From positions 62,001 to 126,000 of the forward strand of contig JAKMXF010000341.1 of the NCBI GenBank assembly GCA_024704765.1: a stretch of 64,000 bases of DNA, read 5' to 3'. The notes beneath the pieces are model-generated. The model worked only from the letters and a program-made list of their open reading frames with translations. It had not been told where the DNA came from and did no database searches. The first letter of the stretch is position 1. Every line of letters starts with the position of its first letter. Source of the DNA: Oopsacas minuta. Its lineage: Eukaryota; Animalia; Porifera. Of the stretch, positions 6,217 through 50,954 are shown piece by piece. A program made the position numbers and the translations under genes.

Positions 6217-7594
6217 TATACTCGTTCAATCCTGCAAGTAAAGCTATAAACATTATATTACTTATCTCATGTAGTTTGTATGAAGCTCGTTTGGAGAGTA
6301 AGCACTTTCACTATATGTTTGTGATACACACAGTCAAAGCAATACTTCTCTCAACCATGTTAGAAGGTCTCCTAAGTACCCCACAATACGCAATAGACTC
6401 TAAAGTGATGTGAAATTGTATTCAAGCAACATTTATCTGGAATAGTAAGATTGATGATGGCCTTGTGGAAGGATACGAACGAGCAGGGATTATACTATAT
6501 GTAGTTACTATTTTAGCAAAATGTTACCCATTTGAAATTAGAATATGAATGTTGCATGCAGCCTTCCAGAGGGGACTACCTCTCCCCGAATAGCCAAATT
6601 TTAGTTCCAATAGAGATACAATACAATTTATACTTACATAATGTATGCATGATGAACTGCGTACTATAATTGTCTTTACAGTAAAGATAATAATATTTAC
6701 ATTTCTATTATGGAAAACTATATATGTTAAGCAACTGAAATATTCAAAATATTTTCCACCACCTTCACAACACAATTCGCTACTCGCTACGCATGTTCAT
6801 ATCTGATCAGAAATTGACTTTATGAATTAGAATTAACGACATTTTTCTGGAAGGCACTAAGCGCAAGCAAGCGAATATTTAGGTTATTTAATTTTCTACT
6901 TTACCATATATGTATGTAACAATTTTTTCAGAACATAAAAATAATCAACTTCTAGTTATACAAATCTATTCAGGCTTGTTTACTTTCAATATTTCTATTT
7001 CTAGTGCACACTACTACACATAGATGTTAAGGATATTTATAGCAAAACAACATAATAATCTATTCGCAGTATGTATGACTGCGAATAGACATATACAGAG
7101 CTATACAAATGATTACATAAACATTCTATTTACGCTGTGACTAGCGTATATTTATGAATTTATCATATCACCTTATCTACATGATTTTGCACTGATAAGA
7201 ATGTTATTCGGAGTGAGAGAGATTGAGTAGAGCGTTTTCTTACCTGTTCTACGAGTATTATTGTAGTTATGGAATTTGATTGAGAAAGCAATAAAATCTA
7301 CTCACTATAGTAATAGTTAATTAAACCACTAAGCTAAACAAACCTTAAAGAGATAACTAGCATGAAAGAGCTAGAGGGTGATTATACTTAGCCCCACATT
7401 ATTTACTCAGTTTATTTGCAGGTGGGTCCAGTGTCCTCATCAGTTATGCTGTAGTATATGATGGACTCGGTTAATTTACTCTTGTCCATGCAAGTGGTCT
7501 AGATATCCTGAATTTTTGAATAATCTGGGCTGTGAATGTATCTAATCCGTTTGTGGAAAAATAATCGTTCAGCCCGTAGTATGAAGTTTGCCGT

Positions 7595-7705
7595 GATTTA
7601 TTGTTGTTTTTATGAATATAAAGTAACAAATTATCCAAATTTCAAAATATACGTACAGGCTTGCTCTAGACGGCTACCCAGGGGTAACTAAGTACGCTGA
7701 ATCCA
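7595..7705 (+). repeat. Dispersed repeat family partial copy upstream of STK36
   Basis: AAAATATACGTACAGGCTTGCTCTAGACGGCTACCCAGGGGTAACTAAGTACGCTGAATCCAA is nearly identical to 60383-60445. Confidence 0.8.
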
Positions 7706-7839
7706 ATATATCTATATTAAAATACTCAAAGGGTAATATTACTGCATTTTATGGACAATCCCGTGATTTTCAGTAGTACAAATATACTGTTCTAATATCA
7801 TAATACCAAAAGTATTGACTAGATAACTGAGTGTATAAT

Positions 7840-21280: not shown

Positions 21281-24200
21281 CTAGAGTGGTGTAGATTGCT
21301 CTAAAGGTGATTCAATGGTATTACAATATACTTCATCTCCAGTAAATCTCTCCAGTTGTATCTCACGTAGTTCTTCTATTGATATCTCCAGACTAACTAT
21401 CCTGTAACAAGTAAAAACATTAATTAATATTTTCTTGTTCAAAGCTCCGGACGAATACTAATCGAATTTACAACCGAAAACAATATATACGAAAGAGGAA
21501 ATACCTTATTCCCTTATTCCCCTGAAATCGTTACGCTGGTATAAAATAAAATTTAAAAATTATTACATATTATCATAAGAGGCTGAGTAAACACAAATAT
21601 AGCCACAACCTATTACACTCCCATAGCTGGTCATCTTACTGTTTTTACGTTATTGCAAATATAAACAAGTAGCGATAATAATTTCTATGAAAAATATAAT
21701 TTTCCTATCTTAATATTGAGATTTAACATAATTTACAAAATATTTCAAAAATTTCCCAATGCAATTTTTGGTTACAAAGCATTTGGCTGGCCACGTGGTG
21801 TATGAGTAAATTAGCTAACTCTAGGATTAGCATAAATTACTGTATGTTATGCTAATCGTAGAATTTAGCTAATAGCTGATACCACAAATAATGTCAAGAA
21901 TTTTCCCTCTTGAGAATACCCAAAATAAGAAGGATAATGGTAACTAACCGTTTAGGCTTAGACTGTCTGAACTTGGCAAAGAATAGAATGAACAATACTG
22001 CTATCAGAATGAGTATTAAAACGCATGAAATTGTTATGGCAGCAATTATCCACGTGTTCTGAGGATCTGTATGAGGGTACATATAACACGGCCATTCAGG
22101 CTGACAGATACACTCAAACTCTCCATTGTCTTTAGCGATACAACTCGTATTGAATGGACAGGGCTGTGAGTAACATACGTGGGGAATATCACACCTCCTC
22201 ATTGACCAAGCTTCCGTGCATTCACAGCTGTACTCTACCGTAAAGTCTTCTGGTCGGATTATTTTGCTGCAGTTTGGATCACTCTCCGGTCCCTAAAATG
22301 TAAGAACATCAAATAACTAAATATCAAAAATCGTCTGATCATAATTTATCTACAAAACCCTCACTTTACATATACCACCGTTAAGACAGGGTCTGTCGCA
22401 AATTGAGAGTGACACAAATAATAGCCCTGAATATGCTCCATTATTGTCTTCAGCCACAACGCCAATTTCATCAGATCCGTAATAACCTTTTGTAGGAGAA
22501 TATTCTACTATAGATTTGCTGCTAGTATTGCGGTATTCTGTAGGAACTTTATTGCCATTGGAAGGAGTCTGTTCTCTCGTTATCATATCACAGTAAGAAC
22601 AATTTTTATATCTAAATGTAGTATTCGTAATAATATTGTCATACTACACGATGTAACACAGTCGCATTGTAAACAAGCTTCATTCATGTAAATTAACTAT
22701 ACAGCAGTGTATCCAATGCGTTTCTTCAAATTACGTACATTGAAACTCGGAGCTACGAAAAAATGCTCCTATAACTCACTTAAATATTAATTCATCTCCT
22801 TTATCCTTGTCATAACTATAGAATGTGAAATTGTGTTGAGTTGTAGAGCCAATTTCATCAATATACACAGTGTATTGCTTAATTCGAGTATTAAATTCCT
22901 CTACTAGTATAGGATTGTGATTCTTTAGTAATATATACACGGTAACTTGACTTGTTGCTGATAGAGGGATGCCAAGGGCTGCAGGGGTACCTAGTTTAAG
23001 ATATGGAAAACAATCAATTACTTGGACTGACTTACTAATAGGTTCATACCATTTGATTACAACACTACAAATTTCCCCCGATCCGCCATTCCACAGCTTA
23101 AACATCGCTATGAGTTAATACCTATGTGTAGCCTGTGTATCACAATATCAACAATTATATTTGTCAATAGAGGAAGGGTTTGGATAATCAAGACTTTTAC
23201 AAAGAAGCAGATTCTTACAACTCACCTGTCTCTATTAAAGTTAAGTTGATGGTGATATTCCCAGATATCCCCGTGGGAGGAGTTACACACAATACACTGT
23301 CATTAATCTCAACACTATATACAGGAACAGCAACAGGATACTCTGAAGCAGATTGTGTGAATACAACAGAAGTGATAGTGTATCTTACTGTGTCATCTTC
23401 TCTATCAGTGTATGTGAGGAGATGTTGTATTGTGCCAGTGTCCTCACTAATACTGATACAGGGGACTGTATCAGGTATGGGAGCTGTGTCTACAAAGCCT
23501 TTCCTCGCTATTATCAAGATAAACTGCCATGGCTCATTACAACGCTAAATAACAGAAACAAAGTATAATTGCTCATAACTGGCATTATGGGAATTCACAT
23601 AAATATCCTGGTTCTCAATATTGGGGAATAAAAAATTAAAATGGGGCCAGCCCCTATATTCCATTTCAGGGGCGTAGACAACATTTTTAGTTTGGGGGGG
23701 CTAACCCTCTGAGGTGTCACTATGGGATTTGACCAAAGTATAAATCAGTGGCATCAATTTGAATTAATATGAACCGATGCTATAATCATATTTTCGCAGC
23801 TTTGTTTTACCATAGTGATGGTTTTACTTTCTAGGTTTCATTCAAAATGAGAATACTTTTTAGTGCTATAGTTAGATTTGAATAATTTTGAGGTTCATAA
23901 ATTTCTGGCATACTATTTCTACGAATCTATCGAATATTGTTATATATTTAACACATCTCTGGTTTTTATTACTGGGCTTCATTCCACTTTGTATTTATAT
24001 GTGTTTGTGATTAAATATTTAAAATTGTTAGCATTCATAATACGTTTAGATATGGCCCTAGCTCGATGGCTCGTTCAAAAAGCTCAGTCAGGATCAGGAG
24101 AGACTGATAAAGATTCAAGTTTGTTTCCAGATAATGAACAAATGCAATTGTTGAGAACAGAAGGTGAATCCTCTAACGAAATTCAGTTAACACATCGAAC

Positions 24201-27200: not shown

Positions 27201-30200
27201 TAATGTTAACTTGCTTTTTATTAATCGCCAAGATAAGTAAGATCTCGTTTGAAAAATTATCAAGTGTTTTATTTAGAGTAGACATGGCATCGACCATCAA
27301 CCAAACGCTCAAAAAATGAACCAAATACCATGTTGAGAATCTGATAAAGTCAAGCCAATCATACATAATGAATTCATCTATTGACACTATTTTGTCAGAG
27401 TCAATATAACGCAGACAAATACCAACAGCGGCGAACACCAACACAGTTATGTTGATAGCACTGATTCTACGATACTTCATACAAATGGCATTAACTTTCG
27501 AGATTAACTGATAATATTTACGCTGAAGATTTTTCACTTCATTCCTACCCTCACGTATCAGTCCAGAAGCATAGGCATAACATAAACAATCCAGACTAGT
27601 TGTAATTTCCATGCATGATATCCTTATAATGAAACATACGATGACAGGTGATAGATGCCAGTGAATTGAATCAATTATGGATAGTAAGAGTGCTAAATCG
27701 GAATCTTGAGTTAGAAGATTAGTTGAATTTGTATTTGCATAACATCCGATTGCATTTACTACAATCCAATAGACTACAAGAGATATACTTAGAATGATGA
27801 TACAAAGATGAAATAACCCCCAGCCAATGTTATCTATGAAACTTTGCATTCGATTATCTGAGCATGTGATACACATATGTAAACGTTCTGTATCCATCCT
27901 CTTCCTTCTACCCCTACCCTCCTCGTCCTTGGTTACATTAATTAGTTGTGACTTTTCTTTGCGAATTTCCATCTTATTTTGTCTAATTTTCTTAATCAAA
28001 GTGACGATTCCTTGAAATTCAGCCTCATTATTCCAAGAGTGGATGAATATGAAAACAGTTGAATATAGGCCAATCAAACCGTAGAGATAATCCCAAATGA
28101 AAAGGAACCAATCCTCATACTCGTGATAATATCTTTGTGAATTAGTTGTGAACACAAGTGACGTCAATGAATTATCCGTCTGATTAGGATACTCTCCAGC
28201 ATGTGTCTGGTTTGGATACATTCCAGTATGTATCTTGATAAACAGCAGTGGGCGAAATATCAAATCGGCGAGGAAAGCTGAGAACATCAAAAATTGTAAC
28301 AGAACACAGCTGCAGAGGATCATGATTAAAACTATGGAGCGAATAGATTTGTAAGAACCTTCATTAAAAGTGACACAACCTGAGATATAAGGATACATGC
28401 GACAAGATGCCAAATCTAGTACAGGAACAAACCAAAATATCTTTGCGCCCTCAATTCTTCTACCGGCATTACTCAGATCTTCATTACCTACAACCTCCTC
28501 ATCTATAATCCTATCGTCATTACCCACATCATTTATAATCACATCGTTATTACTCAGATTATCAAAATTTTGAGCCAGTAACTCTTGACTATTTTCCGAT
28601 GGAAACTTCACATGACTATTTCCCATAGCAATTCTTTACATTTATCATCAGTTAGGATTATTTATTGATTTTACATAGCATTTTAATAAATTGGGAAGAT
28701 TAGTATTACACAATAATAATGAACAACAAAAGTATAACGCCCTTCTGCTTATTATGTATTTGTAATAACCAATCGAGAAAACCTAAATCCTTAATAATAT
28801 TACATAATATTTTTCTGCAGTTGTGGTGTAATATTATTCTTATTACTTCAGACAAAGCAGCAGTAAAATGAAATTGGTAAGGCATTTACATATATTATTA
28901 GAGAAGACATACATAATACAGAACCAGAAAAATGAGTGTTACCTGGCCTGCCGTATCGGTCCGGCCGGCCTTGCTTAATTGTTTTTATCTAATTATAAAA
29001 ATATTAATTTTAGTTGTTTATACTCCTACGCACTATACAATATGAGTAAAAACATAGCCTATGGCAAAACTTAGTGTAATTAACACTAATAAAGTACCAA
29101 AATAACGGACGAATCCCTAATAGTTGCAGATGATATAACTTTTAAATTAGGAACAAATTCATTACGTATCTGGCTAGTCTGGGACTCCTGAGCAATTGCC
29201 TTGTCCGGTCCTAACGCCTGTTCTGCACTTATTCAATGATATAATGATTAAGCCCACCATTAGAAGTCCAGAACTGCCGATTTAACCTTCCCCCCCAATA
29301 TTATAATTATAGTCATGTAAAAGTGACCAATAGTAAGGAATTAAATAATTTTCGTAATATATAAATAGGACTAACCTCATTAGAACCATTGCAAGGACAG
29401 AAATAAGTAATGAGTGTATCTCTGTTATGAATAGTGTCATTATAAGTGAAGTTGCAGCTACTACGAGAAGCTATCCATTCTCTTATATCAGGGTTCCAAC
29501 CCAATAGAATAGGTTCTAATTCATCTGTAACAAGCTCTAAATCAAATTCAATTTGTATCTTGATATAAGAAGAGAAATTACCACCACCAATCGGACTCAA
29601 ATAGAAAGATGGACCATGAAACGCTACAACTCGAGAAAACACTAGCCTATCAACCAAATGGAGAGTAGAAATAGGATCTACAATGTAAGGCGTATACGGA
29701 GTACTCGTAGGAGCAGAAATGACGTCATATTTATCCCTCATATCTTGAATTGTAAGATCTCCTATAATGAATCCATCTTTATGGTTTATATCTTCTGAGA
29801 AACTCACAGTACATCTAGTAGGATAGAGATACTGAGTCGTAAATTCATCTTCCAAGTAAGTATTATATTCTGAAATTTTTCGACTGACTGACATAGTAAA
29901 ATCTTCTGCAGCATTACAATTATACACATAATATTTATCACCCTCTTTATAGAATGTGACTGAATGAGTACCAGCTGATAAACACATAGGTTGAATAGCA
30001 CATAGAATTAGAGTTTGATAGAATATCCTACCGGGCTCAACATTCATTATCAAATCTCCTTCTTTGTAAACATAGTTAGTCTTGTTAGCTAGCTTAGCCA
30101 GGTCTGTTATATTTGAGGCAAAGAATGAATTGTTACCGATTAGGGTAATGTCTTCTATGCGTATAGAGAAACTACTATTATAGGTGATCTCAAAGATAGG

Positions 30201-39200: not shown

Positions 39201-42200
39201 TAACCCTGACAACATGCTGAAACGGTGTGAAAAATATGATTAATCACCAAAAAGGTGTAAAATTCACTAAAAATTCGTACCCCAAGTAAATATCTACACG
39301 CTAAAATATATGTACTAATTTTCATGGTAATCGTACTAGATTTTGCATTAAAGTACGTCCCACATTGTTCATGCCTTTAGGTTAAGTCTTCTCGCTATAG
39401 GACCGGCACTAGAAACAAACCTACCATTATTAACAGCTCTAATCCTAATGAATGCTCTCGTTCCATCCTTTACATTGATCTGATGCAGGAGAGTAGCAGT
39501 GTTGTTAGTGAATATCTTCTCCCAACTCTGTACAAGCGTGTCACTATAGGTTAAGCCAGCTCCTACATACACCTGCTGCAGGCCAGACTGGTTATCTCTA
39601 ATGACAAAAGAAATATTCTATTTAACGACACTGTACTACTTAACAAGCAAAATATGCCTGAACATGGCCATAGGTTGAAACAGGAATCAAAAGTGGAATA
39701 ATAATAGAAAATTTGTGAAAAGACGATAACATGTGCTTCACAAGTCTTATTGAAATTATAGACCTGATATTATCAACTTTATAATTTCTCAAAGATATAA
39801 TCACATATTTGCAAATAGAATTCTCATTAAAATTGTCAAATAAGTATTTTAACAGTACTCACACTGCGTGATAGTAGAATGTAGATATATTAGACGTCTC
39901 GTTGTAAGCTATCAGCTTAACAGTATAAATGACAGGTCGAGTAGTATCAATGATATAGGGTGTAGAGTGACAGAGAGCCAGAACTCCAGAACCTCCAAAT
40001 ATAACTTGATTAAGTGCCTGTACGGTAGCATAGTATATACCGTCATCAAAGTGCTGTTCTATTCTACCTTGTACCGGATCACTAAGAACTGTGGTAGCAT
40101 CTGCTCGAGGATCTCTTGGCGATAAAGCTAAATTTCCACAGTATTCGTAGCCCAGAGACCAAGTGTAGGCATATATATCTAGTAGAAAGAATTGGTTAAG
40201 AAAAATTTAAGTCATAAAGTACCATGTTGAAATACTAATAGCAAATCTGGATTTTACGCACGTACATATGAATAGGTAACAAAGATAATTGTTACGAATT
40301 GCAAATTTTAAACTTGTAAATGAAGTTCAGCCAAAATAACTACATTTGAGCGATTGTATTACATATTTATTTGATAATAACTCACCTGACTCATTATCAT
40401 GGAAACCAAAGAATGTAATGCTCACAAATGAGTTAAGCCTGGTGTACTTTAGTTCAACTTTAATACTCGGACCATTGAATATGCAATCAGATCCAATTCC
40501 ATCTACAACAATTCTATAATTCTTCTCTGGGGTAACATGCACACAACGTTGGTTGATAGCAGCAGTACATCCAGCAGCGATGAAATCATCTCTTGACACA
40601 TTAGCAATAGTTCCAGGCTCCGGTGGAGTAAAGTCAATGAGTATACCCTCAGAACTGAGATAGTTGTCATAAGCTAGCGAATTATTAACATATACATTCA
40701 GGAAGTATAGCTCATTATGAACTAGAGGGAGATTATCGTGTGTGAAGTTCTTGTGACTACCTATCCCTTTCCTCTCATAATAATCAAACTCGTTAGATGT
40801 TTGTATCTCTATATCAGAAGCTCCAGCAATCTCAGATAGAATCTGACAAGTTTTTAGTATGTGAGCATAATTAAAAGAAAAACAGTCATCTGGAAAAGTA
40901 GCACACTCCTTAACACAATCATCTATAGATTTTACAGTAATTGTCTTGAATGAAGGGACACCTAAGCGCTTATCAGGGAACATAATGTAATCACTCAATG
41001 TATTAGCGGTATTGCTCAGGCCGGTTACTTGATCAAACGTAAACGATGTAAAAGGTATAATTTGGTCTCCAAATGCACCTTGTGCATAACCTATACTAAC
41101 AAATTGCTCAATAATCGGAGTAGCGTCTAGCACAACTGAATCTCCAAATAACAGAGTGGGATTACTGGAGTACATATAGTTGAACTTTACTCTACCAAGA
41201 GGAAGAGTAGTATCGTAATCAGCTAGACTACATTGTGAAGCAGTAGCTATACCCTGAGAATTGGAGCCTTTAGCAGTCCAGTATAATGGAACACCTGATA
41301 CGAGTTCTTTAGCTTTAAGTACAGTACTTCCAGACATCCTATCATCTTTAACCAAATCCTCTCCACCTCGATAAGTACCAACTGAGTAGCTGAGCTGAAC
41401 CTGACTCTTATCATCTGCTACAACAATCTGTAGGATAAAAGCTGGATCAGTGTAGTCTCTACCTCCTACCTGAGTGACAGTACATGGAGTAGTTCCTGAA
41501 GTAGATGTAGTATCAGTCTGTTTCTGAGAAGCCACAATAGTATTTGTGGTATTCGAAACGTCAGAAATGGGTGAGAATTCAGGAGGAGATTTATCTTCGT
41601 TAGCATTAGAAATTTGGAGCAGTGTTAACTTAATTGATGGTGCTGTCCAACTGAATATTAACTTATCGAATAAAGTCTTATGAATGGTTGTGAATAATAA
41701 GTTAATAGTTATCTTGAGATAGACATGCAGTGATATGGATAAGGGAATTAAATCAAGTTTAATCTGTATTGTTATTGCGAGTGGGAATTGTTTGAATCCA
41801 ATAGAAGCATTTGTAGGTAGATGAGTATCCATTAACTTACCAACGATATCAATTCCAGCTTCAAATATAGCCAGAGATATAGCAGCACTGCCAGATAATA
41901 GTAATGCTAGGTTAGGATCAGCTACTGCATTCGCTTTCATTGATAAGAAACATAATTTCACATTGATATCTACACCGAAACTACCATCAAGTGCAAATTG
42001 GAAGTGTAGAGGGACCGGTCCGATGAATAAATAGTCATTAATTTGGAAGAAGTTATGAGGCTGTGGAGTAATTGGAATATCACCACTAATGCAGAAATCA
42101 AATGAAGTTGGGAAATCAGTTTGTCCACTGCCAAGCGGATTTTTACCGCTAAGAATAGCATCTAATAAAGCTTGTAGGAAAATAGTCCGAAGATTCTGAG

Positions 42201-43200
42201 TTAACTCGCTAAGGCTGTTGGAAGATTCAGCAGAAGTTCCTGAATCGCCCAGGTCTTTGATGTAAGATACAAACTCACCAATACTCATACCATAGAAATC
42301 TGGTATCTCAACATCACAGCCTTCACCATTATCTCCATTCCCATTAGTTCCATTACCATTAGTTCCGTTTCCATTAGTTCCATTCCCATTAGTTCCGTTT
42401 CCATTAGTTCCATTACCATTAGTCAAATTTCCATTGAATCCAGTGGCTCTAGCTACTCTCGCCCCATTTCCATTGGTTCCATTTCCATTGCTCGTGCAAT
42501 TATTGACGTCTGGAATTGTGAATACGCTCCCTATCAATAACTGGACTGTGTAGAAACAATGTGAGTAATCTTCAGTAGCTTCATTAGGTTGACATAAATA
42601 TGCTGTAAAGTTTACATGGATATCTGATGTCTCTCTGATAATGTTCAGTGCAAGACTGACATTAGCTATTCCTTGGGTTTCAGGTGAATCTGTTGGTATA
42701 TCTAGCTCAAACCCTCCATCTCCATCAGGTAACTCAATAGTTCTATTCAAATCTTGGAAATTTAGCGAAAATGAAGGTTCACAGGGTAAAAGTGTGAGAG
42801 AGAAGTTGACTGAATATTTGAGAAAATCTAGCGTGAGAGAAGAAGCACATTTAACATTGAGACAATTTTTCGTGATTGTACACCATCGATCCTTAGGAAT
42901 TCCTTGTTGCAGATCAGTACATAGATCAGGAGGTAATGCTATTAACCTAGCAGTGAGCGTTTCCTTGTCTCCAGTTTGATCTTCACCTCTTAATTTCAAT
43001 GTGTTCTTAATAGAATCAATGTCCAGAAGTGAAGGATCACTCAGTTCTTGATCATCACAATCTAATGCGGCCTTAGCATTTTCTATAGAAGAATTAATAG
43101 CTGATACAAGCTTGTCAAGTGTAGGGCTATTAAACCCGGACAAGATTTGTAAGACTTGTCCTAGATTTAGTTCATCTACTGAAAAGTTGAATCCACTCTC

Positions 43201-43248
<48 letters not shown>

Positions 43249-46200
43249 GTCTCCATTCTCATCATCATCTCCATTCTCATCATCGTCTCCATTCTCATCA
43301 TCTGCCGATCTTCTAGCTTTTGTAGTTTTAGTTGGATATAACATCTGCTCTTGCTCTTTCGTAAAGTATTTCCCAAGACCTGAATCTCCTGGACGATTAC
43401 TGGGAGTGTTAGGACCATTAGAAGAAGCCTTAGGTAAAATCTTGTTTGTAGATTTTGGGTCGTCAGCCAAATCTTGCTCATAATTTGGTTCTGCATTTAC
43501 AGGCTTAGACGGATTGGTATTTCCTTCATCGACTGTCGGCTTATCACATTCAGTACCGCATGGCTGACGAGGACTTCCCATTTCACTTTTTTTAGGATCA
43601 GACCCAAGAGTACCCTGACGGATTACAATGTCTAAAATTTCTAATTTGTAATCATTGCAATCGCTAATCCACTTAGGTACCTCTAGTAGTCGTGGTTGCA
43701 AGAATTTAGCAGGACTTGTTGGATCTCCTTTAGATTTAGTCATCATTGTAAGGTGTACGAAGTTGGGTGAACATTTCGACTGAGTCACAGTGCCAATAGT
43801 AGTTCCTGAGTTAATATTAATACCTGCTTTAGTGATATTACTTATGAGACTGATATGATGAATTGCAATTACATATTTCTCAAGAGAGCCTCCAGGAAAT
43901 ATCAGAACTTGATTTGCTATCTTAGTCAAGTAAAGCCCTGTAACAGGAGCAAACAACGCCTCACCTTCTGGAATTTCTATTTGCATACCCTCTTTATAGG
44001 TTGTTGCATCACCAGACGTGGTTGGATAAAACCCGCATTGGCATTCAGTTGATTCACAACCATCTTCGCCTCTGATACTTCTAGGAAACTTTGAATTGAA
44101 TCTGGGGCCCAATAACTGTTCTATTAACCCCATAGCATCCTCATAAGCACCTTTCAATGTATTATACGCTTTTATGCCTGTTTTTATAATATTGACTGTA
44201 GAGGTAAACGCTGTTAAAAATGGTTCAACAATGTTTATTAATGGGGCAATCGGGGCAGTAAACTTTTCCAATGCATTCTCAAGATCTGAATAAGCCTTTT
44301 TACGAAGTACTGAAACATTCAAACCTGTTGCTTCTTCGAAACTAGAAATATCTGTGATTTCTGAAAACTGTTTCGCTTCTTGGATGAGTAAATCTTTTGT
44401 CTTAATGGTATCATTGTATACTCCCTTAAGTGTGTTTACTAAGTCCATCCATCCTCTAATATGTGATCCCTGAAACTTAGCCGCATTCAACAGAATATCC
44501 TTACATTCTATTACCCCATCAAAAGCTGTCTTTAACTGAAACACAGATGATGTAACATCTGCAATAGCAGTGAGTGGATTATCAAAGAATTTAGCTATCG
44601 CATCGACTATTGTTTCGATGGAGGTTTTTATTGTACCCCCAACCCAAGGTAGAGTAACTGTTGCACAGCTGGATATTTCTTGATAAAATTTCAATACATC
44701 ACCTCGTACATCACTAAATGTAGACTTGATTTTGTCTATTAGTGTTAGTGCACTCTTAACGAAAGGGATTTGTTGTAACGTAACGAGTAGTTTACGTAAT
44801 TCAGCAGAAACTACCAAATTCTTAATTAATCCGGGGAATTCCTTTACTGCAACTTCAATTTCATGAAACACATATCTCAAATCAATTCCATGCTGAAAAG
44901 CAGTTCTAAAATCGACAATTGCCGACTTTACAGCACCAACTACAGCGCCTATTGTATTGTCGTATAAATGTGCAAGATTGGTAAAAGAATTGATACCTAA
45001 TTCCTGCAGAATATTCAGATTATATTCAATATGCCCTTTGAAGCAAACCTGTGCAAGGAATACATTAAGAGTAAGATCAACGAAACCGATCCCAACTTTG
45101 AAATAAGCTTCGTCGAATACATCTATAGAAAATTTACCACTTAAGGGCTTGATATCAAGATCCATGATATTACGTACAACTAAACCCATAGAAGCGCCGA
45201 ACTCGGAACTTCCTATTGATTTCTTCCAATTGAAACTCGGAGTTTGTAAATGGAAAGAGAGAGCATCGAATATACTGAATCTCCTAATTCTTCTTTTGCT
45301 GGCATCGACAGGAGACTGCTGAGCATTAGTATAGTTATGGAAGTCGGATAGGATATCTGACATAGAGTCTGCTCTGGGGTGCTTTTGGTATTGTAGGGTA
45401 GCTTCATAGCGAACTACTTCCTCTTCATCAACCAATGCTGCTGATAATATAGTATCTGCTGCCTGTATATGTAGTAAATTAAACACAGGTATATTATAAA
45501 TACATATAGTTACCCTGTCTATAACTACTACGCTATACAGTAATCACCTGTAAATGAGGTCACTTTTGCCTAGTTATTGGTGACTATTATTAGCCATTAG
45601 CAGGTTCCTCTATACTAAAAATGTATTCACGCGGAATTAAGTAGATTTTATAGGCAAATTTTTGATAATCATAATATCACATGATTAATAATAGTATTTT
45701 AAAATATTCTTTTCGTACATACCTTCTCTAGAAAACGATCCTAGAGGTTTGTTTCCAACGAATATGCTGTATGATTGTTAAATAATCCCGAAATTTAATA
45801 ATTCTCTATCGGCACACATTTTATCGAATAAACATAATTTGTAAGTAATAATAGAGCAAAAGCCCTCTTCCTATGTCACTGGTAGATTTAGTTCACATGC
45901 GAATATACCTAGAATAAAGTAATTTACTCGTACATAGTAAATACCTCGTCAGTATGATATTTCCTCAATGAATGAACAGCAGATCTCCTGAGGAGAGAAG
46001 GAACATGCTTAGACTCTACATAACTCTTAATCAGATTGAAGCTATTCTCGTGACCGGCATTACCCAGTGAGTGTATAAGGCTAGATTGTCTCAACATGCC
46101 TACACTATCAGTGGAGGGTCTGTTTGAATTATCCGTATTATCTCGTCTATATCTACAATATTTAATATTATAAGCATTATGTATAACTCAATTGGAACAC

Positions 46201-49200
46201 AAAGATAGTATCTAGTAATGAGATGCCACATTTGAAACGATGAAATTCAAAAGAGACGCATGCATTTGTCTGAACTTTATAGCATACAATGGTTAGACAG
46301 AGGTACCCACTTGCCCGAATTTGTAATATACATTTGTCCGAATTATAACCAACAACCAGAAATAACACATCCGGCTATGCCATTGCCCTATGGTCCTATC
46401 ACCCTAGTGTATCCTACATCGTTTCAGATTATTCATATTCAAGGTATCACTAACCTAATGTGATCATAAGGTAGTGTCATTCTGTGTAGCTTAGATAGGA
46501 TACGTTCAGACAGCAGAGGGTCTGATACTCTAAGAGAAGCACTCATGGCACCCAGAGCTAGCACTGCCATGTTAGAGAGTGTACTATTGTGGAGCTGTTT
46601 TGGAAAAGAGCTAGGATGGAAAGCTAACTGATCCATTACATCAATAGCAAAGAGAGAGGGTCTTTTCGTTGTGGCCAGATGTGGCAGTATTTTAAATGCC
46701 ATGTCTATCTCCACACAGTTTACATAGAGGAATGAGACGAGTATATACTGACAAGATGCTCTGTTACACATTCCTAGTGCATCTATCATAGTCAATACAT
46801 CTGAGCGTTTGTTAAAGGGACAGGACAAATAATCAACTGATAACTGAGTAATATCTTGCTCTTTCATCTGCTCTATGACATTGACTATCTTCCTAATTAA
46901 CTTAACACATTCTGCTGTTGTTTTTGGATAGCATTTCTCTGTCAGAGTTAGGTTGGATTGGATCTATCAATGAAAGATACCAGTACAAAATACATAGGAA
47001 TACTATTATCTGTATACAATTATTAATACATGATATCACCCGAGCTGACCGAGCAATTTATCATTTCAATGAATGTAGTTAAAGTACTCAACATCTTCAG
47101 GAGAATTACTATTCGAGTAAATACGGTAATAAATCGCTCTACAGATAATAATAGTTTCGAAAATTCCCTAAAGCATTGATCAGCAACACTTTGGCTGGCG
47201 GACAAGATGCAGAAAATTTGGGATATAGAAATATTATACGGCCATTCCCTAAACCGCTAGAATTATAGTCAGTGTATTTTAAACCATATCAGAGGGCACT
47301 TTGGGGTCTCTAATTTATAACGTGCTAAGTATCCAATATCATTACATTTTGTGGTGAGGGAATTCAATTGTTGGCAGGCCAGCTAAGCAAATCCTAAAAA
47401 AATTATTACAGTTGAAATCGTTATTTTTCATTTCTTTACACGAGGAATGAAGACAAAAAATGCGTTAAGTAAAATGATACAACAATATTTACAGATAAAA
47501 AAAGTATTTCTGTACAATTTATACGTTTTTAAGAGAAACTAATCTGAAACTCAAAATAGTTTGGTGTTAAAATAACCAAATTTCAATTGATACTAAACAA
47601 ATGCGAAATACCATTCCTTAAACTCAGAAATATCTCGTTGTATTATTATTTTTTCAGGATATTAGCTAGAACATCAAATTATTTTGCATTAATTTATAAC
47701 ACCTCAAGAGGTAACTATTTATATATAAAATAAACGTATCACTAATTATTGCTTGCAAGTATTCACATAATTCATTAGTATTCATGTTTGCAGTGAGGAG
47801 GAAATTTTATTTAGAATTATCATATTATGATTTCTACCTGAGTTTTAGCATTTTTGTATTGAATAGGACTTTTCACAACTCTTTGGGCTATAATACTGTC
47901 AAAAATGAGACCAGCAGGTTCTCGAATAGAAAGGGGATCAAATTTAGACATTGCTATCAGATATATCTTAGATAGACCGGTAGCCTTTATTTGAGGAGGT
48001 TTCTCTATCGAGTAGGATTCTGTTTCAGGAGTGTTAGATATCTTTGCAGTGTCCTGCACCCGAATCAACTCAATATGACCTAATCATAATATAAAGTGAT
48101 ACAGTGGAACCTGCAAAACCGACACTTGTTGGATTATGCATGCGAATTTGTATTATCGGAAGCTATTTCAGGTCAGAAACACTGTCAGATTATAGAGGTG
48201 TAGTTTATACAGGTTCTACTGTAATTCTCAATTGTTGTTTGTGCAAACTAAAGGTAAATAACATAATTCAAATAAATGTAAGAATAGTAACAAACCAGTT
48301 TCTGTTTTTATTTGCATTTCTTTGCTTTGAGTATGATCTCTTTGAGGATCTCTCTTGATCTTCTTGTAAGTAACAACATTATTTCTCTCATTCACTTCAT
48401 ATCTACAGTACAAAGACTTACAGGTAAGAAATCTTATCTTAGCAAAAGTAATTTGACATATTTCAAAAATTTAATTAGAGCCAAAAATACAGTGCCCACC
48501 GGACAATCCGTTACATCATTCGCGGCGGATTATCCGGTGGGCACAATACTATTATACGTAACAATATATTACAAAGGAATTGGTGTATTATATTACAAAG
48601 GAATTGGTGTATGAAATTACAAGCCCAATGTGCTAAATTCTGCTTAATTACTACTTTCCGTTCCGATTGTTATCCACTCAGGTTGAACAAGCAATTTTAG
48701 ACAACTACTATTGTTAATACAGTGGAACTTCGTTAATACGAACACAGTTAATAAGAATTTCCAGATAAGATGAACAAACATTTGCACATAATCAGGTCCT
48801 TACAATGGAAATACAATGAGTATTACTCCGGTTAATACGAACCAGTGGCGGCGGAACCACGTGGGCTACGGGAGCTTAGCCCCCTAAATATCAGGCTTGT
48901 TGTATAAAATATTTCTCTGTATAAAAGCTAATTTCCTATTTACACATCAAATTCAGAAATGCTGTATATTGCCATTGAAAACTGTTAGAGTGAACTGTTC
49001 GTTGTGCTTGTTATTGATATAAATACTTTTGAGAATCCAATGCCCTTCAAATCAATAATATTACCTGTCATTTTTACGATTTCTGCCCCCCTGAAAAATA
49101 ATTCATTCCGCCTCCACTGATACGAACTCCGTAAAAGGCGAACAAAATTTGACGGTCCGTTGGTGTTCGTATTAACAAAGTTTCACTGTAATAATAAACA

Positions 49201-50954
49201 CAATTTTTCTACAATACGACAATATTGGGTATGGATATGGGCATGTCCTTAAGGAGAATATATCAAAGTACAAAATAAACTAACTTTGCAGAATGAGTTC
49301 CTGAATGATCCAAATCAGGTACCCTGTAACTCCATCCTCCGTATTTCTTACTGGTTCCTTTATTCCTGACGTAGTTATGTAGACGTAGAGAGAAAGAGCT
49401 TATAACTGCTTTCTTCAGTTGTAACACCTCTGTATCTTCATTCTCTGGATATCGTACCTTGCTATTAGATGGAAAATTAACAATACACTCAGTAGCGACC
49501 CTACTAGAAGGCCAGTTGTCGTCAAACAAACGGAAAACAGTGTAGACTTCTTCCCGTAGGAATTTCAGGGACAGGATTACAGAATTCACTATTCATAAGC
49601 ACTAGTAAATTAATGATTCACCTGATTAGTCCATCTTGTCGCTGATAGAATGAGAACCACTGAGAGAAATTCAGGTTATGCTCAGTCATTTCATGACTTT
49701 GCTCTCCGGCTTGTACACTTATCACACTTGTATCAGTGAGTCGAACATGTACCGAGGTGCAGTTGAGAGTTCCAAATAAATCCTCTCGCATTAATACACC
49801 TTCTTTCTCTTCACATTGACTAACTGCATATCCGGAGAGGAAAGCTCTCGCGGTAAAGAAGAACCTGTCTACATCTTTTAAAGTTATCTAATAACATAAA
49901 CACAATAGAACTCAGATAAGACGTACTCCCTATGGAAATAAAATTAGTACCTACTAACCGAAGTATATCTTAAGGGTACAGCCGAAATCGTTTTTTTTGC
50001 CCAAAAAATGCATGAAAAAGAGGCAAAATAATCCGTTTCAACGAGTAAACCAATTTATGCTTTTAGGGCGAAATTCTTAGACTTTATGTTCATCGAATTA
50101 GTCCAGTACAGAGTCAGAAACAAGAAAAATCGATATTAACTAAACAATTAACAATATTTAATCATTTGATAAATGAAAATTGCACTCTTGATCACTTAAC
50201 ATATGAAAAAGAGAAAGAAACAGAGACGCAAAATAACCAGAAATAATGCATTAAAATTATACTTTTTTATATGATTAAGTTATCAAAACCTGATAGAAAA
50301 AAATTAAACAACCAATTAAGTTTTGTATTTATATTGTATTTTGGGAGAAACAAGCAATTGCAAGGAGGCAAAAATAAAATTACCCAGCGGCGCCAATTAA
50401 TTATACAAATATACATATCACAATTACGACTGTACTAACCGAGTTCTACTGTTACAATATTATATTATGAGTAGCAAACAGAAAATATTATCAACTACCT
50501 AAAACATATACAACTTCTACAAAATGACGCGAATTCCTTAGTTCGAAACTATCACTCTTCATGAGAACATGAAATTTACAAACACACAGATTGGGACTGC
50601 GGACGGTATTTTATATTGTATATGCAGGGTTGCCATGGGAATGCGAATTGGAATTCCGTTCCCACGGCACCTGTGTGTTTGGGCCAATGACATATTTGGG
50701 ATCTGTTGTCTCATTACATTATTTATGGGGATAAAAATTGAATATTTCAGTTACACAAGTATATAAGTAAAATATGGGTTTCTCTATCTGCGATCAAAAT
50801 TATTCTCAAAATTGTTAAAATACCAACTCCTTACCTCTGCAGAGTATGAGTATTCATACTGTGAACCCACCAAGAACGGGGTAGGGGTAATCTCTGTCCT
50901 TCCAGTACGGATAAGAAATAGAATAATGAAGATAAGAAGTGAATGCTTTGTCAT
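21281..50954 (-). CDS. Giant type I membrane protein (~5210 aa) with N-terminal vitellogenin/large lipid transfer module, FN3-like array, PAN, cadherin-like and EGF domains; 20 exons
   Basis: Hand-assembled exons (minus strand): 50954-50835, 49887-49622, 49461-49285, 48402-48296, 48079-47838, 46963-46455, 46152-45945, 45462-40386, 40178-39863, 39597-39425, 38797-38142, 37827-37677, 36575-36124, 35709-35100, 34585-29376, 23544-23226, 23107-22780, 22611-22365, 22292-21949, 21401-21281. All introns are GT-AG, all phases match, and the total of 15633 nt is divisible by 3 and ends in TAG. The signal peptide MTKHSLLIFIILFLIRTGRT is at the start and a TM helix lies near the end. The 29376-23544 join crosses an assembly gap. 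Confidence 0.8.
21975..22052 (-). other. Transmembrane helix of the giant gene
   Basis: WIIAAITISCVLILILIAVLFILFFA is followed by basic KFRQSKPKR and preceded by two EGF-like Cys clusters. Confidence 0.9.
24052..26459 (+). CDS. hAT transposase (TTF-type zinc finger, DUF4371, hAT dimerisation domain), interrupted by assembly gap
   Basis: WY..FPWLHY...C..C zinc finger, MVDETTD, QCYDGASNM, CYGHALN and, after the gap, MPATNATSERSFSALRRLKTWLR. No stops in the sequenced parts. Confidence 0.9.
25193..26190. other. Assembly gap (run of N)
   Basis: 998 consecutive N. The poly-X ORFs in the track are artefacts of this gap. Confidence 1.
27019..28626 (-). CDS. Intronless 7-TM protein with gustatory-receptor-like (7TMIC) topology, 535 aa, nested in an intron of the giant gene
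   Basis: Seven hydrophobic segments. NQT/NST sequons in loops 1-2 and 3-4 and a highly basic loop 2-3 imply N-terminus-in topology. YYQLISKVNAI lies in loop 4-5. The C-terminus LSMDLFGIVTPSTVHLIIGFGSTTILIFVNE resembles the GR TM7a/7b region. The ORF is certain; the family call is moderate. Confidence 0.6.
   Translation of the reverse strand: MGNSHVKFPSENSQELLAQNFDNLSNNDVIINDVGNDDRIIDEEVVGNEDLSNAGRRIEGAKIFWFVPVLDLASCRMYPYISGCVTFNEGSYKSIRSIVLIMILCSCVLLQFLMFSAFLADLIFRPLLFIKIHTGMYPNQTHAGEYPNQTDNSLTSLVFTTNSQRYYHEYEDWFLFIWDYLYGLIGLYSTVFIFIHSWNNEAEFQGIVTLIKKIRQNKMEIRKEKSQLINVTKDEEGRGRRKRMDTERLHMCITCSDNRMQSFIDNIGWGLFHLCIIILSISLVVYWIVVNAIGCYANTNSTNLLTQDSDLALLLSIIDSIHWHLSPVIVCFIIRISCMEITTSLDCLCYAYASGLIREGRNEVKNLQRKYYQLISKVNAICMKYRRISAINITVLVFAAVGICLRYIDSDKIVSIDEFIMYDWLDFIRFSTWYLVHFLSVWLMVDAMSTLNKTLDNFSNEILLILAINKKQVNINEDIKKQLELCEMNNHRLSMDLFGIVTPSTVHLIIGFGSTTILIFVNEVTKVILEKIRIN
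36870..37185 (-). repeat. Tandem units (~140-150 bp) of a dispersed repeat family marked by GGATTCAGCGTA
   Basis: The motif recurs at ~36876, 37016 and 37168 with similar intervening sequence. Related copies occur elsewhere in the window. Confidence 0.75.
40775..40995 (-). other. PAN/apple domain in the giant gene
   Basis: KSIDDCVKECATFPDDCFSFNY....TCQILSE...FDYYER has the C-x3-C...C-x-S-F-x-Y...C-x-L pattern. Confidence 0.75.
42323..42500 (-). repeat. Coding 15-bp repeat (GNGTN)n
   Basis: NGNGTNGNG...NLTNGNGTNGNGTNGNGTNGNGTNGNGTNGNGDNG in exon 8 of the giant gene. Confidence 0.95.
43201..43305 (-). repeat. Coding (GAT)n poly-Asp tract with ENGDDD units
   Basis: DDENGDDDENGDDDENGDDDDDDDDDDDDDDDEE. 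Confidence 0.95.
43693..43998 (-). other. Degenerate peptidase M23/LECT2-like domain in the giant gene
   Basis: EGMQIEIPEGEALFAPVTG...IAIHHI...GININSGTTIGTV...VHLTM...GDPTSPAKFL follows the M23 pattern, but the HxxxD and HxH zinc ligands are not conserved. Confidence 0.6.
48102..48221. mobile_element. 120-bp Tc1/pogo-like MITE in intron 4 of the giant gene
   Basis: TA flanks, CAGTGGAACCTG / CAGTAGAACCTG ends. The interior is the inverted homologue of 61735-61889. Confidence 0.7.
48720..49188. mobile_element. Tc1/pogo-like MITE (host element), TA TSD
   Basis: 26-bp TIRs CAGTGGAACTTCGTTAATACGAACAC / CAGTGAAACTTTGTTAATACGAACAC (24/26) flanked by TA. Confidence 0.85.
48843..49119. mobile_element. 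277-bp hAT MITE nested in the pogo-like MITE
   Basis: TIRs CAGTGGCGGCGGAA / CAGTGGAGGCGGAA (13/14). Perfect 8-bp TSD ATACGAAC at 48835-48842 and 49120-49127. Confidence 0.92.

What the first reader, a model, noticed from the sequence alone, without database searches (positions are those of the whole stretch)
21281..50954. Hidden ~5,200-aa membrane-tethered vitellogenin/LLTP mosaic protein spread over 20 exons
Seen: the scattered minus-strand ORFs join through 19 GT-AG introns with matching phases into one frame, from a signal peptide to a TM helix and 49-aa tail. Established: large lipid transfer proteins (vitellogenin, apolipophorin, apoB, MTP) are normally soluble, and several vitellogenins bind microbial surfaces. 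Inference: an LLTP module on a long FN3-like/PAN/cadherin/EGF stalk with an M23-like domain could be a cell-surface lipid-capture or bacteria-capture receptor, for example in filter feeding. I know of no characterised protein with this architecture.
Basis: partly seen in the sequence, partly recalled or inferred. Interest (0 to 1): 0.88.

Follow-up and report, generated by a model that had tools for sequence, protein, structure and literature searches.

The report
Giant membrane-anchored vitellogenin-like sponge protein
The scattered reading frames do form one 20-exon gene for a roughly 5,170-residue cell-surface protein whose tip resembles the front end of yolk and lipoprotein carriers; uncharacterised relatives of it occur from chytrid fungi and single-celled relatives of animals to amphioxus.

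Summary
Observation confirmed. On the minus strand, 50954-21281 holds one open frame of 5,171 codons across 20 exons and 19 GT-AG introns. It starts with a signal peptide and ends with one TM helix and a 49-aa tail.

An RNA-like run shows exons 8-11 and 11-15 spliced. That contig's length matches exons 15-18 exactly. The assembly gap (25193-26191) lies in intron 15, and orthologues show no missing exon.

The gene is not an orphan. Predicted proteins of 4,600-5,400 aa in amphioxus, abalone, scallop and acorn worm align with it almost end to end. Capsaspora and chytrid members align more patchily, and a choanoflagellate fragment also matches. All are "uncharacterized", and I found no paper on the family.

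The tip has the LLTP beta-barrel and helical solenoid: profile hits to lipovitellin and MTP, and top fold matches to vitellogenin, MTP and apoB. The canonical lipid-cavity sheets do not follow directly. Instead come a helical bundle and an M23/LECT2-like domain that has lost its catalytic motifs in this sponge. A weakly MTP-like beta block lies about 1,050 aa downstream.

PAN, at least 16 FN3-like repeats and EGF-like modules form the stalk. "Cadherin" is weak.

Lipid or bacteria capture is untested. The scan also noted a paralogue on another piece of this genome.

The parts
21281..50954 (-). Whole gene: 20 coding exons, 19 GT-AG introns, 5,171 codons plus stop
   Evidence: model. (RNA contigs). 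(colinear orthologues).
50835..50954 (-). Exon 1: start codon, signal-peptide-like hydrophobic segment, first strand of the LLTP beta-barrel
   Evidence: P0010 residues 24-45 align here.
45945..49887 (-). Exons 2-7: LLTP N-terminal beta-barrel and most of the helical solenoid (model aa 41-543)
   Evidence: Colinear sub-threshold Vitellogenin_N hits on exons 6 and 7. Orthologue P0010 scores 34.2 bits against a cut-off of 24. The family profile hits lipovitellin 1LSH at 7e-12 and MTP at 2e-9. AF2 and Foldseek on the orthologue.
40386..45462 (-). Exon 8 (giant exon A, 5,077 nt; model aa 544-2236)
   Evidence: Its 3' 2 kb lies in X2 contig 11, spliced to exons 9-11.
44197..45135 (-). Long alpha-helical bundle inserted after the LLTP helical domain (model aa ~653-965)
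   Evidence: The AF2 model of the orthologue shows helices 653-941 at pLDDT 70-80. The profile hits coiled-coil and helical-bundle chains.
43687..44001 (-). M23/LECT2-like domain with degenerate catalytic motifs (model aa ~1031-1135)
   Evidence: Peptidase_M23 is found in 10 of 49 family members, best E 9e-12. The profile hits LytM at 1e-5 and LECT2 at 1.5e-4. In the window the HxxxD position reads K-E-G-M-Q and the HxH position reads F-V-H.
42322..43344 (-). Poorly conserved linker with a poly-Asp run, a SAP-like motif (43029-42922) and NGT/NGNGT sequon repeats
   Evidence: sequence. (gap in the homologue alignments at 1227-1626). A SAP hit in one family member and source names containing 'SAP domain'.
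41686..42006 (-). Conserved amphipathic beta block weakly resembling the A-sheet of the MTP lipid-binding domain (model aa 1696-1802)
   Evidence: Four distant members hit PF19444 at the same profile positions and the same alignment columns, E 0.002-0.02, all below the cut-off. The block profile's only PDB hits are MTP residues 751-832, E 0.44.
40744..40962 (-). PAN/apple domain (model aa ~2044-2116)
   Evidence: PAN_1 scores 35 bits against a cut-off of 21.4. The same domain is found in Oopsacas and scallop homologues.
32196..40467 (-). Array of 14 consecutive FN3-like repeats (model aa 2209-3818) spanning the end of exon 8, exons 9-14 and the first part of exon 15; the range includes the introns between them
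   Evidence: Iterated HMM on the model. Every exon junction in this stretch is seen in X2 contigs.
29376..34585 (-). Exon 15 (giant exon B, 5,210 nt; model aa 3022-4758), beta-sandwich stalk with two further FN3-like repeats at aa 4213-4400
   Evidence: AF2 of the orthologue's C-terminal 1,200 aa shows a string of beta-sandwiches.
23545..29375 (-). Intron 15 (5,831 nt), containing the assembly gap 25193-26191 and a nested same-strand ORF 28626-27022
   Evidence: Its first 731 nt are held by the DNA runs but not by the RNA-like run. The orthologous introns are 2.9 kb and 0.7 kb and lack the ORF.
22365..23544 (-). Exons 16-18: last beta-sandwich domains (Big_9/cadherin-like at best) and the first half of an EGF-like module
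   Evidence: The X2 contig length fits exons 15+16+17+18 exactly.
21949..22292 (-). Exon 19: EGF-like cysteine modules and the TM helix (aa 5098-5122, 22052-21978)
   Evidence: EGF_MSP1_1 at E 7e-5, below the cut-off. Hydropathy 3.35. It aligns to the Oopsacas C-terminus.
21281..21401 (-). Exon 20: end of the 49-aa cytoplasmic tail and the stop codon
   Evidence: This junction is the least certain, because reading through exon 19 to the stop at 21897 is the alternative.

Best explanation
One gene encodes a ~5,171-aa type I membrane protein. It is the sponge member of an old, uncharacterised family of giant surface proteins found across opisthokonts.

Anatomy, shown by tools or read from the sequence:
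- A signal peptide.
- A 'head' made of the LLTP N-terminal beta-barrel and helical solenoid.
- A ~1,050-aa insert carrying a long helical bundle, an M23/LECT2-like domain without catalytic motifs, an acidic run, a SAP-like motif and NGT sequon repeats.
- A conserved beta block that weakly resembles the MTP lipid-binding A-sheet.
- A PAN domain.
- At least 16 FN3-like repeats plus further beta-sandwich domains.
- Two EGF-like modules, one TM helix and a short tail.

Mechanism, inferred at about 0.3 probability for the specific form: the protein is a cell-surface binding or adhesion receptor. A stalk of roughly 30 or more beta-sandwich domains would hold the conserved head on the order of 100 nm from the membrane. 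The head would bind a ligand through the LLTP barrel and solenoid, which are the receptor- and partner-binding parts of vitellogenin, apoB and MTP, and through the non-catalytic M23 domain used as a binding module.

A lipid-holding cavity may exist if the displaced beta block packs against the solenoid, but this has not been shown. The confidence value refers to the gene structure, the architecture and family membership.
For: Gene model and open frame.

RNA evidence: X2 contig 11 joins exon 8 to exons 9, 10 and 11. X2 contig 9 joins exons 11, 12, 13, 14 and 15. After exon 14, 5,987 nt of contig 9 remain, which equals 5210+319+211+247, the lengths of exons 15-18. The first 731 nt of intron 15 are held by three DNA runs but not by X2.

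Homologues: Oopsacas proteins P0010 and P0019 map colinearly onto the model. The conserved exon 13 homologue is one open frame across the annotated split between them. The model aligns at residues 27-1227 and 1626-5076 with amphioxus XP_078620548, and through the TM region with the Saccoglossus and Ylistrum proteins.

Head: Vitellogenin_N in 33 of 49 members and Peptidase_M23 in 10 of 49. Profile hits to lipovitellin, MTP, LytM and LECT2. AF2 of the orthologue and Foldseek, with the top 11 PDB hits all LLTPs.

Stalk.

Family range: Capsaspora, Spizellomyces, Geranomyces, Salpingoeca urceolata, Patiria, Anneissia, Owenia, Haliotis and Branchiostoma.
Against: There is no direct RNA evidence for junctions 1-8 or 18-20. 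The link from exon 15 to exons 16-18 rests on contig-length arithmetic and on the absence of intron words from X2, not on a laid alignment.

Structure predictions used the Oopsacas orthologue, not the window protein. Confidence was moderate (mean pLDDT 72 and 64; pTM 0.39 and 0.45).

The function is entirely inferred. There are no expression-site, localisation or binding data.

The amphioxus homologue ends in Sushi and C-type lectin domains, and I detected no TM segment in it, so membrane anchoring is not universal in the family.

The MTP-like beta block is below significance in every single test.
Confidence: 0.8

Rival explanations
1. The locus holds two or more separate genes. Either it splits as in the Oopsacas annotation (a vitellogenin/PAN gene and an FN3 gene), or exons 16-20 form a separate small EGF/TM gene beyond the gap.
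For: The Oopsacas annotation lists two adjacent genes, LOD99_10427 and LOD99_10426. A 5.8-kb interval with an assembly gap and another ORF separates exon 15 from exon 16.
Against: An RNA contig splices exons 11 to 15 across the exact point of the Oopsacas split. In Oopsacas the two gene ranges lie 81 bp apart, and both fall within one uninterrupted conserved exon, L002:9887-10351. P0019 itself joins exon 15 to exons 16-19. Single-protein models of 4,600-5,400 aa in four animal phyla are colinear with the whole model. Contig arithmetic and the absence of intron words from X2 point the same way.
Confidence: 0.04
2. It is a working lipid-binding LLTP. The barrel, the solenoid and the displaced beta block would form a lipid cavity, so the protein captures or presents lipid at the cell surface.
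For: The LLTP barrel and solenoid are clear. A conserved amphipathic beta block at aa 1696-1802 hits MTP_lip_bd at the same profile positions in four distant members, and MTP is its only PDB hit. Large inserts within the lipid-binding sheets are tolerated in vertebrate vitellogenin, where phosvitin interrupts them (established knowledge of the lipovitellin structure).
Against: All beta-block hits are below the curated cut-offs (14.7-17.8 bits against 27; E 0.44 against PDB). The wider A3 profile found nothing in PDB. After the solenoid the AF2 model shows only a four-strand, low-confidence sheet. No Vit_open_b-sht or DUF1943-type domain passes threshold anywhere. No lipid data exist.
Confidence: 0.2
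3. It is a microbe-recognition or microbe-capture receptor. The M23-like domain, derived from peptidoglycan hydrolases, together with PAN would bind bacterial envelopes for feeding or immunity.
For: The M23 domain is conserved across the family. Some members keep both HxxxD and HxH, for example Potamilus P0038. Many hosts are suspension or particle feeders.
Against: In this sponge both metal-ligand motifs are degenerate. LECT2, the known animal M23-fold protein, is a signalling ligand and not a bacterial binder. The family also occurs in osmotrophic chytrid fungi. No binding data exist.
Confidence: 0.15
4. It is mainly a structural cell-coat or cell-cell/matrix adhesion protein. The LLTP-like head would serve only as a protein-protein interaction module, with no lipid or microbe role.
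For: About three quarters of the protein is tandem beta-sandwich, as in adhesion and matrix proteins. There are many N-glycosylation sequons. The LLTP barrel and solenoid are the partner-binding parts in MTP and apoB: PDB entry 9BD8 (apoB beta barrel bound to the LDLR beta propeller) is among the fold hits. Amphioxus paralogues swap the TM end for Sushi and lectin modules.
Against: The head, not the stalk, is the part most conserved from fungi to chordates, including the M23 domain and the beta block. That points to a specific ligand.
Confidence: 0.3

Closest known systems
Uncharacterised giant proteins predicted in other genomes: Branchiostoma LOC144887293 (XP_078620548.1, 5,363 aa), Haliotis (XP_067664253.1, 5,123 aa), Saccoglossus LOC102804939 (4,932 aa), Ylistrum LOC132554093 (4,640 aa), Capsaspora KJE92161.1 (4,741 aa), Spizellomyces SPPG_08216 (5,053 aa), Geranomyces (5,052 aa)
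   Same: The animal members are colinear with the window protein over almost its whole length, at 25-30% identity (residues 27-1227 and 1626-5076 for amphioxus). They share the Vitellogenin_N head, the M23 domain, the beta block, PAN, the FN3-like stalk and, in Saccoglossus and Ylistrum, a C-terminal TM segment. The chytrid and Capsaspora members share the head, the M23 domain and the beta block, and match the stalk in patches at 20-25% identity.
   Different: The amphioxus protein ends in five Sushi repeats plus a C-type lectin, and I detected no TM segment in it. Some members keep intact M23 motifs. The linker at 1227-1626 is not conserved. None has a described function or a paper that I could find.
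Oopsacas minuta LOD99_10427 plus LOD99_10426 (glass sponge)
   Same: This is the orthologous locus. It has the same exon order and 49-77% identity per exon.
   Different: It is annotated as two genes whose ranges lie 81 bp apart, with the split inside a conserved open exon, which is probably an annotation artefact. Its intron 15 is 2.9 kb and has no nested ORF.
Large lipid transfer proteins: vitellogenin/lipovitellin, apoB, apolipophorin, MTP
   Same: It shares the N-terminal beta-barrel and helical solenoid by sequence profile and by fold. It may also share part of the A-sheet.
   Different: Canonical LLTPs are soluble lipoproteins or ER-lumenal proteins of 900-4,500 aa in which the C- and A-sheets follow the solenoid directly. 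Here a ~1,050-aa insert follows it, the protein is membrane-anchored, and most of its length is a beta-sandwich stalk. LLTPs are described in the literature as animal proteins (PMC1783640), whereas this family includes fungi and protists.
LECT2 and degenerate LytM/M23 domains
   Same: It has the M23 fold at family level with loss of catalytic residues.
   Different: LECT2 is a small secreted protein said to keep its zinc site (from memory, not tested). The sponge domain has lost both metal-ligand motif positions and is embedded in a giant protein.

Membership tests
LLTP superfamily (LLT module / Vitellogenin_N) | N-terminal beta-barrel (N-sheet) | tested here: met
   The AF2 model of orthologue P0010 has a barrel at residues 35-290 with pLDDT around 90. 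Foldseek aligns it with vitellogenin, MTP and apoB from residue ~8. The family profile covers lipovitellin residues 2-504. Window exons 1-5 align to P0010 residues 24-309. The test was made on the orthologue and the family profile, not on the window protein itself.
LLTP superfamily (LLT module / Vitellogenin_N) | Alpha-helical solenoid following the barrel (Pfam PF01347 match) | tested here: met
   Window exons 6 and 7 give colinear sub-threshold hits (16.3 and 22.2 bits, profile positions 318-447 and 482-522). The orthologue scores 34.2 bits against a cut-off of 24, and 33 of 49 family members match.
LLTP superfamily (LLT module / Vitellogenin_N) | C-sheet and A-sheet forming the lipid cavity (PF09172 / PF19444) | tested here: inconclusive
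   Only a four-strand, low-confidence sheet follows the solenoid. A displaced block at aa 1696-1802 gives reproducible but sub-threshold MTP_lip_bd hits. MTP is that block's only PDB hit, at E 0.44.
LLTP superfamily (LLT module / Vitellogenin_N) | Soluble lipid-carrying protein | not testable with these tools
   The sequence predicts a membrane anchor. Lipid loading can only be tested experimentally.
Peptidase family M23 | Sequence and fold similarity to the M23 domain | tested here: met
   PF01551 is found in 10 of 49 members, best E 9e-12. The family profile hits LytM at 1.2e-5 and LECT2 at 1.5e-4. The window segment on its own finds nothing in PDB.
Peptidase family M23 | Catalytic and zinc motifs HxxxD and HxH | tested here: not met
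   In the window row the first motif position reads K-E-G-M-Q and the second reads F-V-H. The other glass-sponge-like sequences are similar. Some molluscan and amphioxus members keep H-x-G-V-D and H-I-H.
PAN/apple domain | Pfam PF00024 above the gathering score | tested here: met
   35 bits against a cut-off of 21.4, at exon 8 residues 1501-1572.
Fibronectin type III repeats | Pfam PF00041 match and a repeated ~90-aa beta-sandwich unit | tested here: met
   fn3 scores 24.9 bits against a cut-off of 25, so it is borderline. An iterated HMM finds 16 copies, E 1e-14 to 4e-29. The AF2 C-terminal model is a string of beta-sandwiches that matches Ig/FN3/cadherin/MG arrays.
Cadherin repeats | Pfam cadherin-family match | tested here: not met
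   No cadherin family hits the window exons. The only related hit is Big_9 at E 0.01. The scallop homologue scores 25.9 bits on Cadherin_5 against a cut-off of 26.5, and passes Big_9. Calcium-binding motifs were not examined.
EGF-like domain | Six-cysteine EGF pattern or a Pfam match | tested here: inconclusive
   There are ten cysteines in aa 5017-5104 in an EGF-like spacing. EGF_MSP1_1 scores 23.1 bits against a cut-off of 27. The AF2 model has short hairpins there at low confidence.
Uncharacterised opisthokont giant-protein family (amphioxus LOC144887293 and relatives) | Colinear alignment over head, beta block, stalk and C-terminus | tested here: met
   blastp of the model against amphioxus, abalone, scallop and acorn worm proteins is colinear over most of the length. 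Capsaspora and chytrid proteins match the head and beta block and, in patches, the stalk. phmmer E-values range from 1e-15 to 1e-85.

The most novel reading that the evidence does not exclude
The LLT (vitellogenin/apoB/MTP) module did not arise in animals as a soluble lipid carrier. It is older, and it first sat at the tip of a giant surface protein shared by fungi, filastereans, choanoflagellates and animals. In that protein it is interrupted by a helical bundle and an M23 domain. Canonical lipoproteins would then be shortened derivatives of such a protein, and this sponge gene is a surviving member of the ancestral form.
Probability: 0.3. Interest if true: 0.8.

Novelty: new variant of a known kind. 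Interest (0 to 1): 0.62.

Why it matters
LLTPs (vitellogenin, apoB, apolipophorin, MTP) are treated in the literature as an animal superfamily of soluble lipid carriers (for example PMC1783640).

This locus belongs to a family that places the same barrel-plus-solenoid module on a ~5,000-aa, usually membrane-anchored protein. Vitellogenin_N scores above the Pfam cut-off in Capsaspora, a choanoflagellate and a chytrid. That makes the origin of the lipoprotein module testable outside animals.

It also points to an unstudied class of very long surface proteins, present in many marine invertebrates but not among the hits I examined from vertebrates, insects or nematodes.

On the practical side, the result gives a correct gene model for this genome and shows that the Oopsacas annotation probably splits one gene in two.

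Tried and rejected
- My first codon-usage and splice-site gene finder gave a 17-exon model. It skipped exons 6-7, took a false exon inside the nested ORF (28605-27918) and stopped at 22350. I replaced it with homology-guided junction scoring.
- Pfam on single small exons mostly gave nothing.
- The window's M23 segment alone found no M23 structure in PDB. Only the family profile did.
- ESM Atlas feature searches of exon 15 and of the 1626-2044 region gave only weak, unspecific leads: bacterial Ig/FN3 and DUF6603, with scores of 0.85 or less.
- The wider A3 profile (aa 1626-2044) found nothing in PDB at E<=10.
- I looked for a canonical LLTP among the weakest phmmer hits, to run a profile-profile test of the beta block. 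None had a lipid-binding domain.
- Eight literature searches on the family, its accession numbers, and LLTPs in sponges, fungi and protists found no description.
- Read-through of the RNA contig into intron 15 was considered and rejected.
- The idea that the gap hides an exon was rejected on orthologue continuity.
Full report
**What is in the sequence.** The window is AT-rich eukaryotic DNA. The minus strand between 51 kb and 21 kb carries two very long open frames, 45486-40327 and 34577-29313, plus many short ones.

Both long frames have close relatives in several assemblies. The nearest named relative is the glass sponge Oopsacas minuta, at 49-59% identity. Unnamed ENA contigs reach 64-70%. 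The window therefore comes from a sponge related to Oopsacas, but the species was not identified.

**Gene model.** I mapped the two adjacent Oopsacas proteins, P0010 (LOD99_10427, 2,527 aa) and P0019 (LOD99_10426, 2,464 aa), onto the window. They gave a colinear series of blocks from 50897 down to 21942.

I then scored every phase-compatible GT/AG pair at each junction by similarity of the joined peptide to those proteins. The result is 20 exons, 19 GT-AG introns, 15,516 coding bases, 5,171 codons and no internal stop.

The product has:
- a hydrophobic N-terminal signal-like segment;
- one strong TM segment at residues 5098-5122;
- a 49-residue tail.

An alternative acceptor at 49500 would add 13 residues to exon 3. 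The exon 19-20 junction is the least secure.

**RNA evidence.** Of four runs from one sample, X1, X3 and X4 cover introns evenly, so they are DNA. X2 has no depth in most introns and its contigs skip them at GT-AG borders, so it behaves as RNA.
- X2 contig 11 (2,738 nt) joins the last 2 kb of exon 8 to exons 9, 10 and 11.
- X2 contig 9 (7,452 nt) joins exons 11, 12, 13 and 14 and enters exon 15.

Contig 9 bridges the one place where the Oopsacas annotation divides the locus. In Oopsacas the two annotated gene ranges lie 81 bp apart. Both fall within one conserved, uninterrupted exon 13 homologue, L002:9887-10351. That split is most likely an annotation artefact.

**The gap and the 3' exons.** The N run 25193-26191 lies in intron 15 (29375-23545), so frame continuity across it does not arise. 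Four lines of evidence connect the two sides:
- Exon 15 ends and exon 16 begins in phase 0.
- P0019 passes from residue 2049 to 2050 across the junction, and the junction peptide aligns without an indel.
- In Oopsacas and in a closer relative (L003), the exon 15 and exon 16 homologues are neighbours on one strand, 2.9 kb and 0.7 kb apart.
- 5,987 nt of contig 9 lie beyond exon 14, which equals exons 15+16+17+18 exactly (5210+319+211+247). The first 731 nt of intron 15 are held by the three DNA runs but not by X2.

I could not lay reads on this part. This link is therefore inferred, though strongly. The real length and content of the gap are unknown.

**The family.** A full-library phmmer search with the first 1,200 residues of P0010 found 157 proteins. 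Among them are gene models of 4,600-5,400 aa. Name look-ups place family members in:
- Branchiostoma, Saccoglossus, Ptychodera, Patiria, Anneissia;
- Haliotis, Ylistrum, Argopecten, Potamilus, Solemya, Batillaria, Owenia;
- the filasterean Capsaspora;
- the choanoflagellate Salpingoeca urceolata;
- the chytrids Spizellomyces and Geranomyces.

All are named "uncharacterized" or "hypothetical", or carry automatic domain names. The window protein aligns colinearly with the amphioxus protein over residues 27-1227 and 1626-5076. It aligns with the Saccoglossus and Ylistrum proteins up to their TM segments. These independent one-gene models in other phyla are further support for the single-gene reading. 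Eight literature searches found no paper on the family.

**The head.** A 49-sequence alignment of N-terminal parts (A1) gave these results:
- Vitellogenin_N in 33 members, best E 1e-19, and Peptidase_M23 in 10 members, best E 9e-12.
- Profile hits in PDB to lipovitellin 1LSH (7e-12, profile positions 21-521), MTP (2e-9), LytM (1e-5, positions 1009-1111) and LECT2 (1.5e-4).

AlphaFold2 on P0010:1-1200 with this alignment had mean pLDDT 72. It shows:
- a beta-barrel at residues 35-290;
- a helical solenoid at 300-570;
- a small four-strand sheet at 590-644, at low confidence;
- a long helical bundle at 653-941;
- a beta domain at about 980-1090.

Foldseek's best eleven PDB matches are all LLTPs: honeybee vitellogenin, lipovitellin, MTP and apoB100. 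The best Swiss-Prot matches are vitellogenins and MTPs, aligned to query residues of about 8 to 625-700 only. The barrel and solenoid of the LLT module are therefore present. The large C- and A-sheets that normally follow are not.

In the M23 block, the window and its closest relatives read K-E-G-M-Q where M23 enzymes have HxxxD, and F-V-H where they have HxH. Some molluscan and amphioxus members keep both motifs. In this sponge the domain is thus non-catalytic.

**A possible displaced sheet.** After the M23 domain comes a poorly conserved linker holding a poly-Asp run, a SAP-like motif and NGT repeats. Conservation then resumes at residue 1626.

Within that region, residues 1696-1802 form a strongly conserved block of alternating hydrophobic pattern. 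Four distant members (amphioxus, abalone, Capsaspora and an unnamed Logan protein) each hit Pfam MTP_lip_bd at the same profile positions, about 160-260 of 294, and in the same alignment columns. E-values are 0.002-0.02, below the cut-off.

A profile of the block alone has exactly two PDB hits at E<=10. Both are the MTP large subunit, residues 751-832 of 8EOJ_B (741-822 of 6I7S_G), at E 0.44. Each test is weak, but they agree. My reading is that the LLT module is split by a ~1,050-aa insert.

**The stalk and the end.**
- PAN_1 passes its cut-off.
- An HMM iterated from the one fn3 hit finds 16 FN3-like repeats, 14 of them consecutive at residues 2209-3818.
- AlphaFold2 on P0019:1265-2464 gives a chain of beta-sandwiches, short cysteine-rich hairpins, a TM helix and a disordered tail.
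- The fold matches for that model are generic Ig/FN3/cadherin/MG arrays.
- "Cadherin" is not supported in the window itself.

**Interpretation.** Gene structure, architecture and family membership are well supported. Function is not.

The head is the part conserved from fungi to chordates, so I expect it to bind a specific ligand. The stalk would hold it far from the membrane. Whether that ligand is lipid, a microbial envelope or another protein cannot be decided here. The family's presence in chytrids argues against a role tied to filter feeding.

The most interesting open reading is evolutionary: the LLT module predates animals and lived first in this kind of giant surface protein. Vitellogenin_N scores above the Pfam cut-off in Spizellomyces (46.8 bits), Capsaspora (63 bits) and Salpingoeca (33.3 bits). 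Direction and ancestry, however, need a rooted phylogeny that I could not build, because I had no canonical LLTP sequences to work with.

**Earlier notes of the scan.** The same stretch was noted before from an overlapping window (s1-226821). A paralogue with the same head on another piece of this genome was also noted (s1-226712); I did not examine it.

Noticed in passing
window 27022-28626 (minus strand), inside intron 15: An intronless 535-aa ORF with several hydrophobic segments lies on the same strand as the giant gene, 750 nt downstream of the exon 15 donor. It has ten homologues of 475-517 aa (42-54% identity) in related assemblies. It has no Pfam hit. It is absent from the orthologous intron in Oopsacas and in L003, so its nesting here is lineage-specific. 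An earlier scan note calls it gustatory-receptor-like; I did not test that.
   Followed up: partly
window 22293-22364 (intron 18) and 22365: The 7,452-nt RNA contig appears to end exactly at the exon 18 donor, as a de Bruijn contig does at a branch point. If the 72-nt intron 18 were retained, the frame would stop after four codons. That would give a secreted form without the EGF-like modules, TM helix and tail. This is inference only.
   Followed up: no
window 36914-37504 and 39081-39277 (introns 12 and 10): Summed contig depth in the DNA runs rises from about 60-200 to 1,000-12,000, with many aberrant joints and loose ends. These are high-copy repeats, probably transposon fragments.
   Followed up: no
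L001/L002 (Oopsacas minuta JAKMXF010000035.1), L002:9887-10351: The annotated genes LOD99_10427 and LOD99_10426 lie 81 bp apart and meet inside one conserved open exon. They are most likely one gene of about 5,000 aa.
   Followed up: yes
window 43344-42322 (exon 8): The exon holds low-complexity stretches: a poly-Asp/DDENG run of about 40 residues and about ten NGNGT repeats, which are stacked N-glycosylation sequons. Between them lies a SAP-like motif at 43029-42922. Some homologues are auto-named 'SAP domain-containing'.
   Followed up: partly
window 49461-49500: Two phase-compatible acceptors exist for exon 3. Similarity to Oopsacas favours 49461, while my composition-based model chose 49500, which adds 13 aa.
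   Followed up: partly
window 34997-40322: Thirteen single-base differences and one 1-nt deletion separate the X3/X4 contigs from the window and from X1. This suggests heterozygosity or more than one genotype in the sample.
   Followed up: no
another piece of the same genome (scan note s1-226712): The scan noted a second membrane-anchored protein with a vitellogenin/LLT head and amphipathic helices elsewhere in this genome. It is probably a paralogue of this gene.
   Followed up: no
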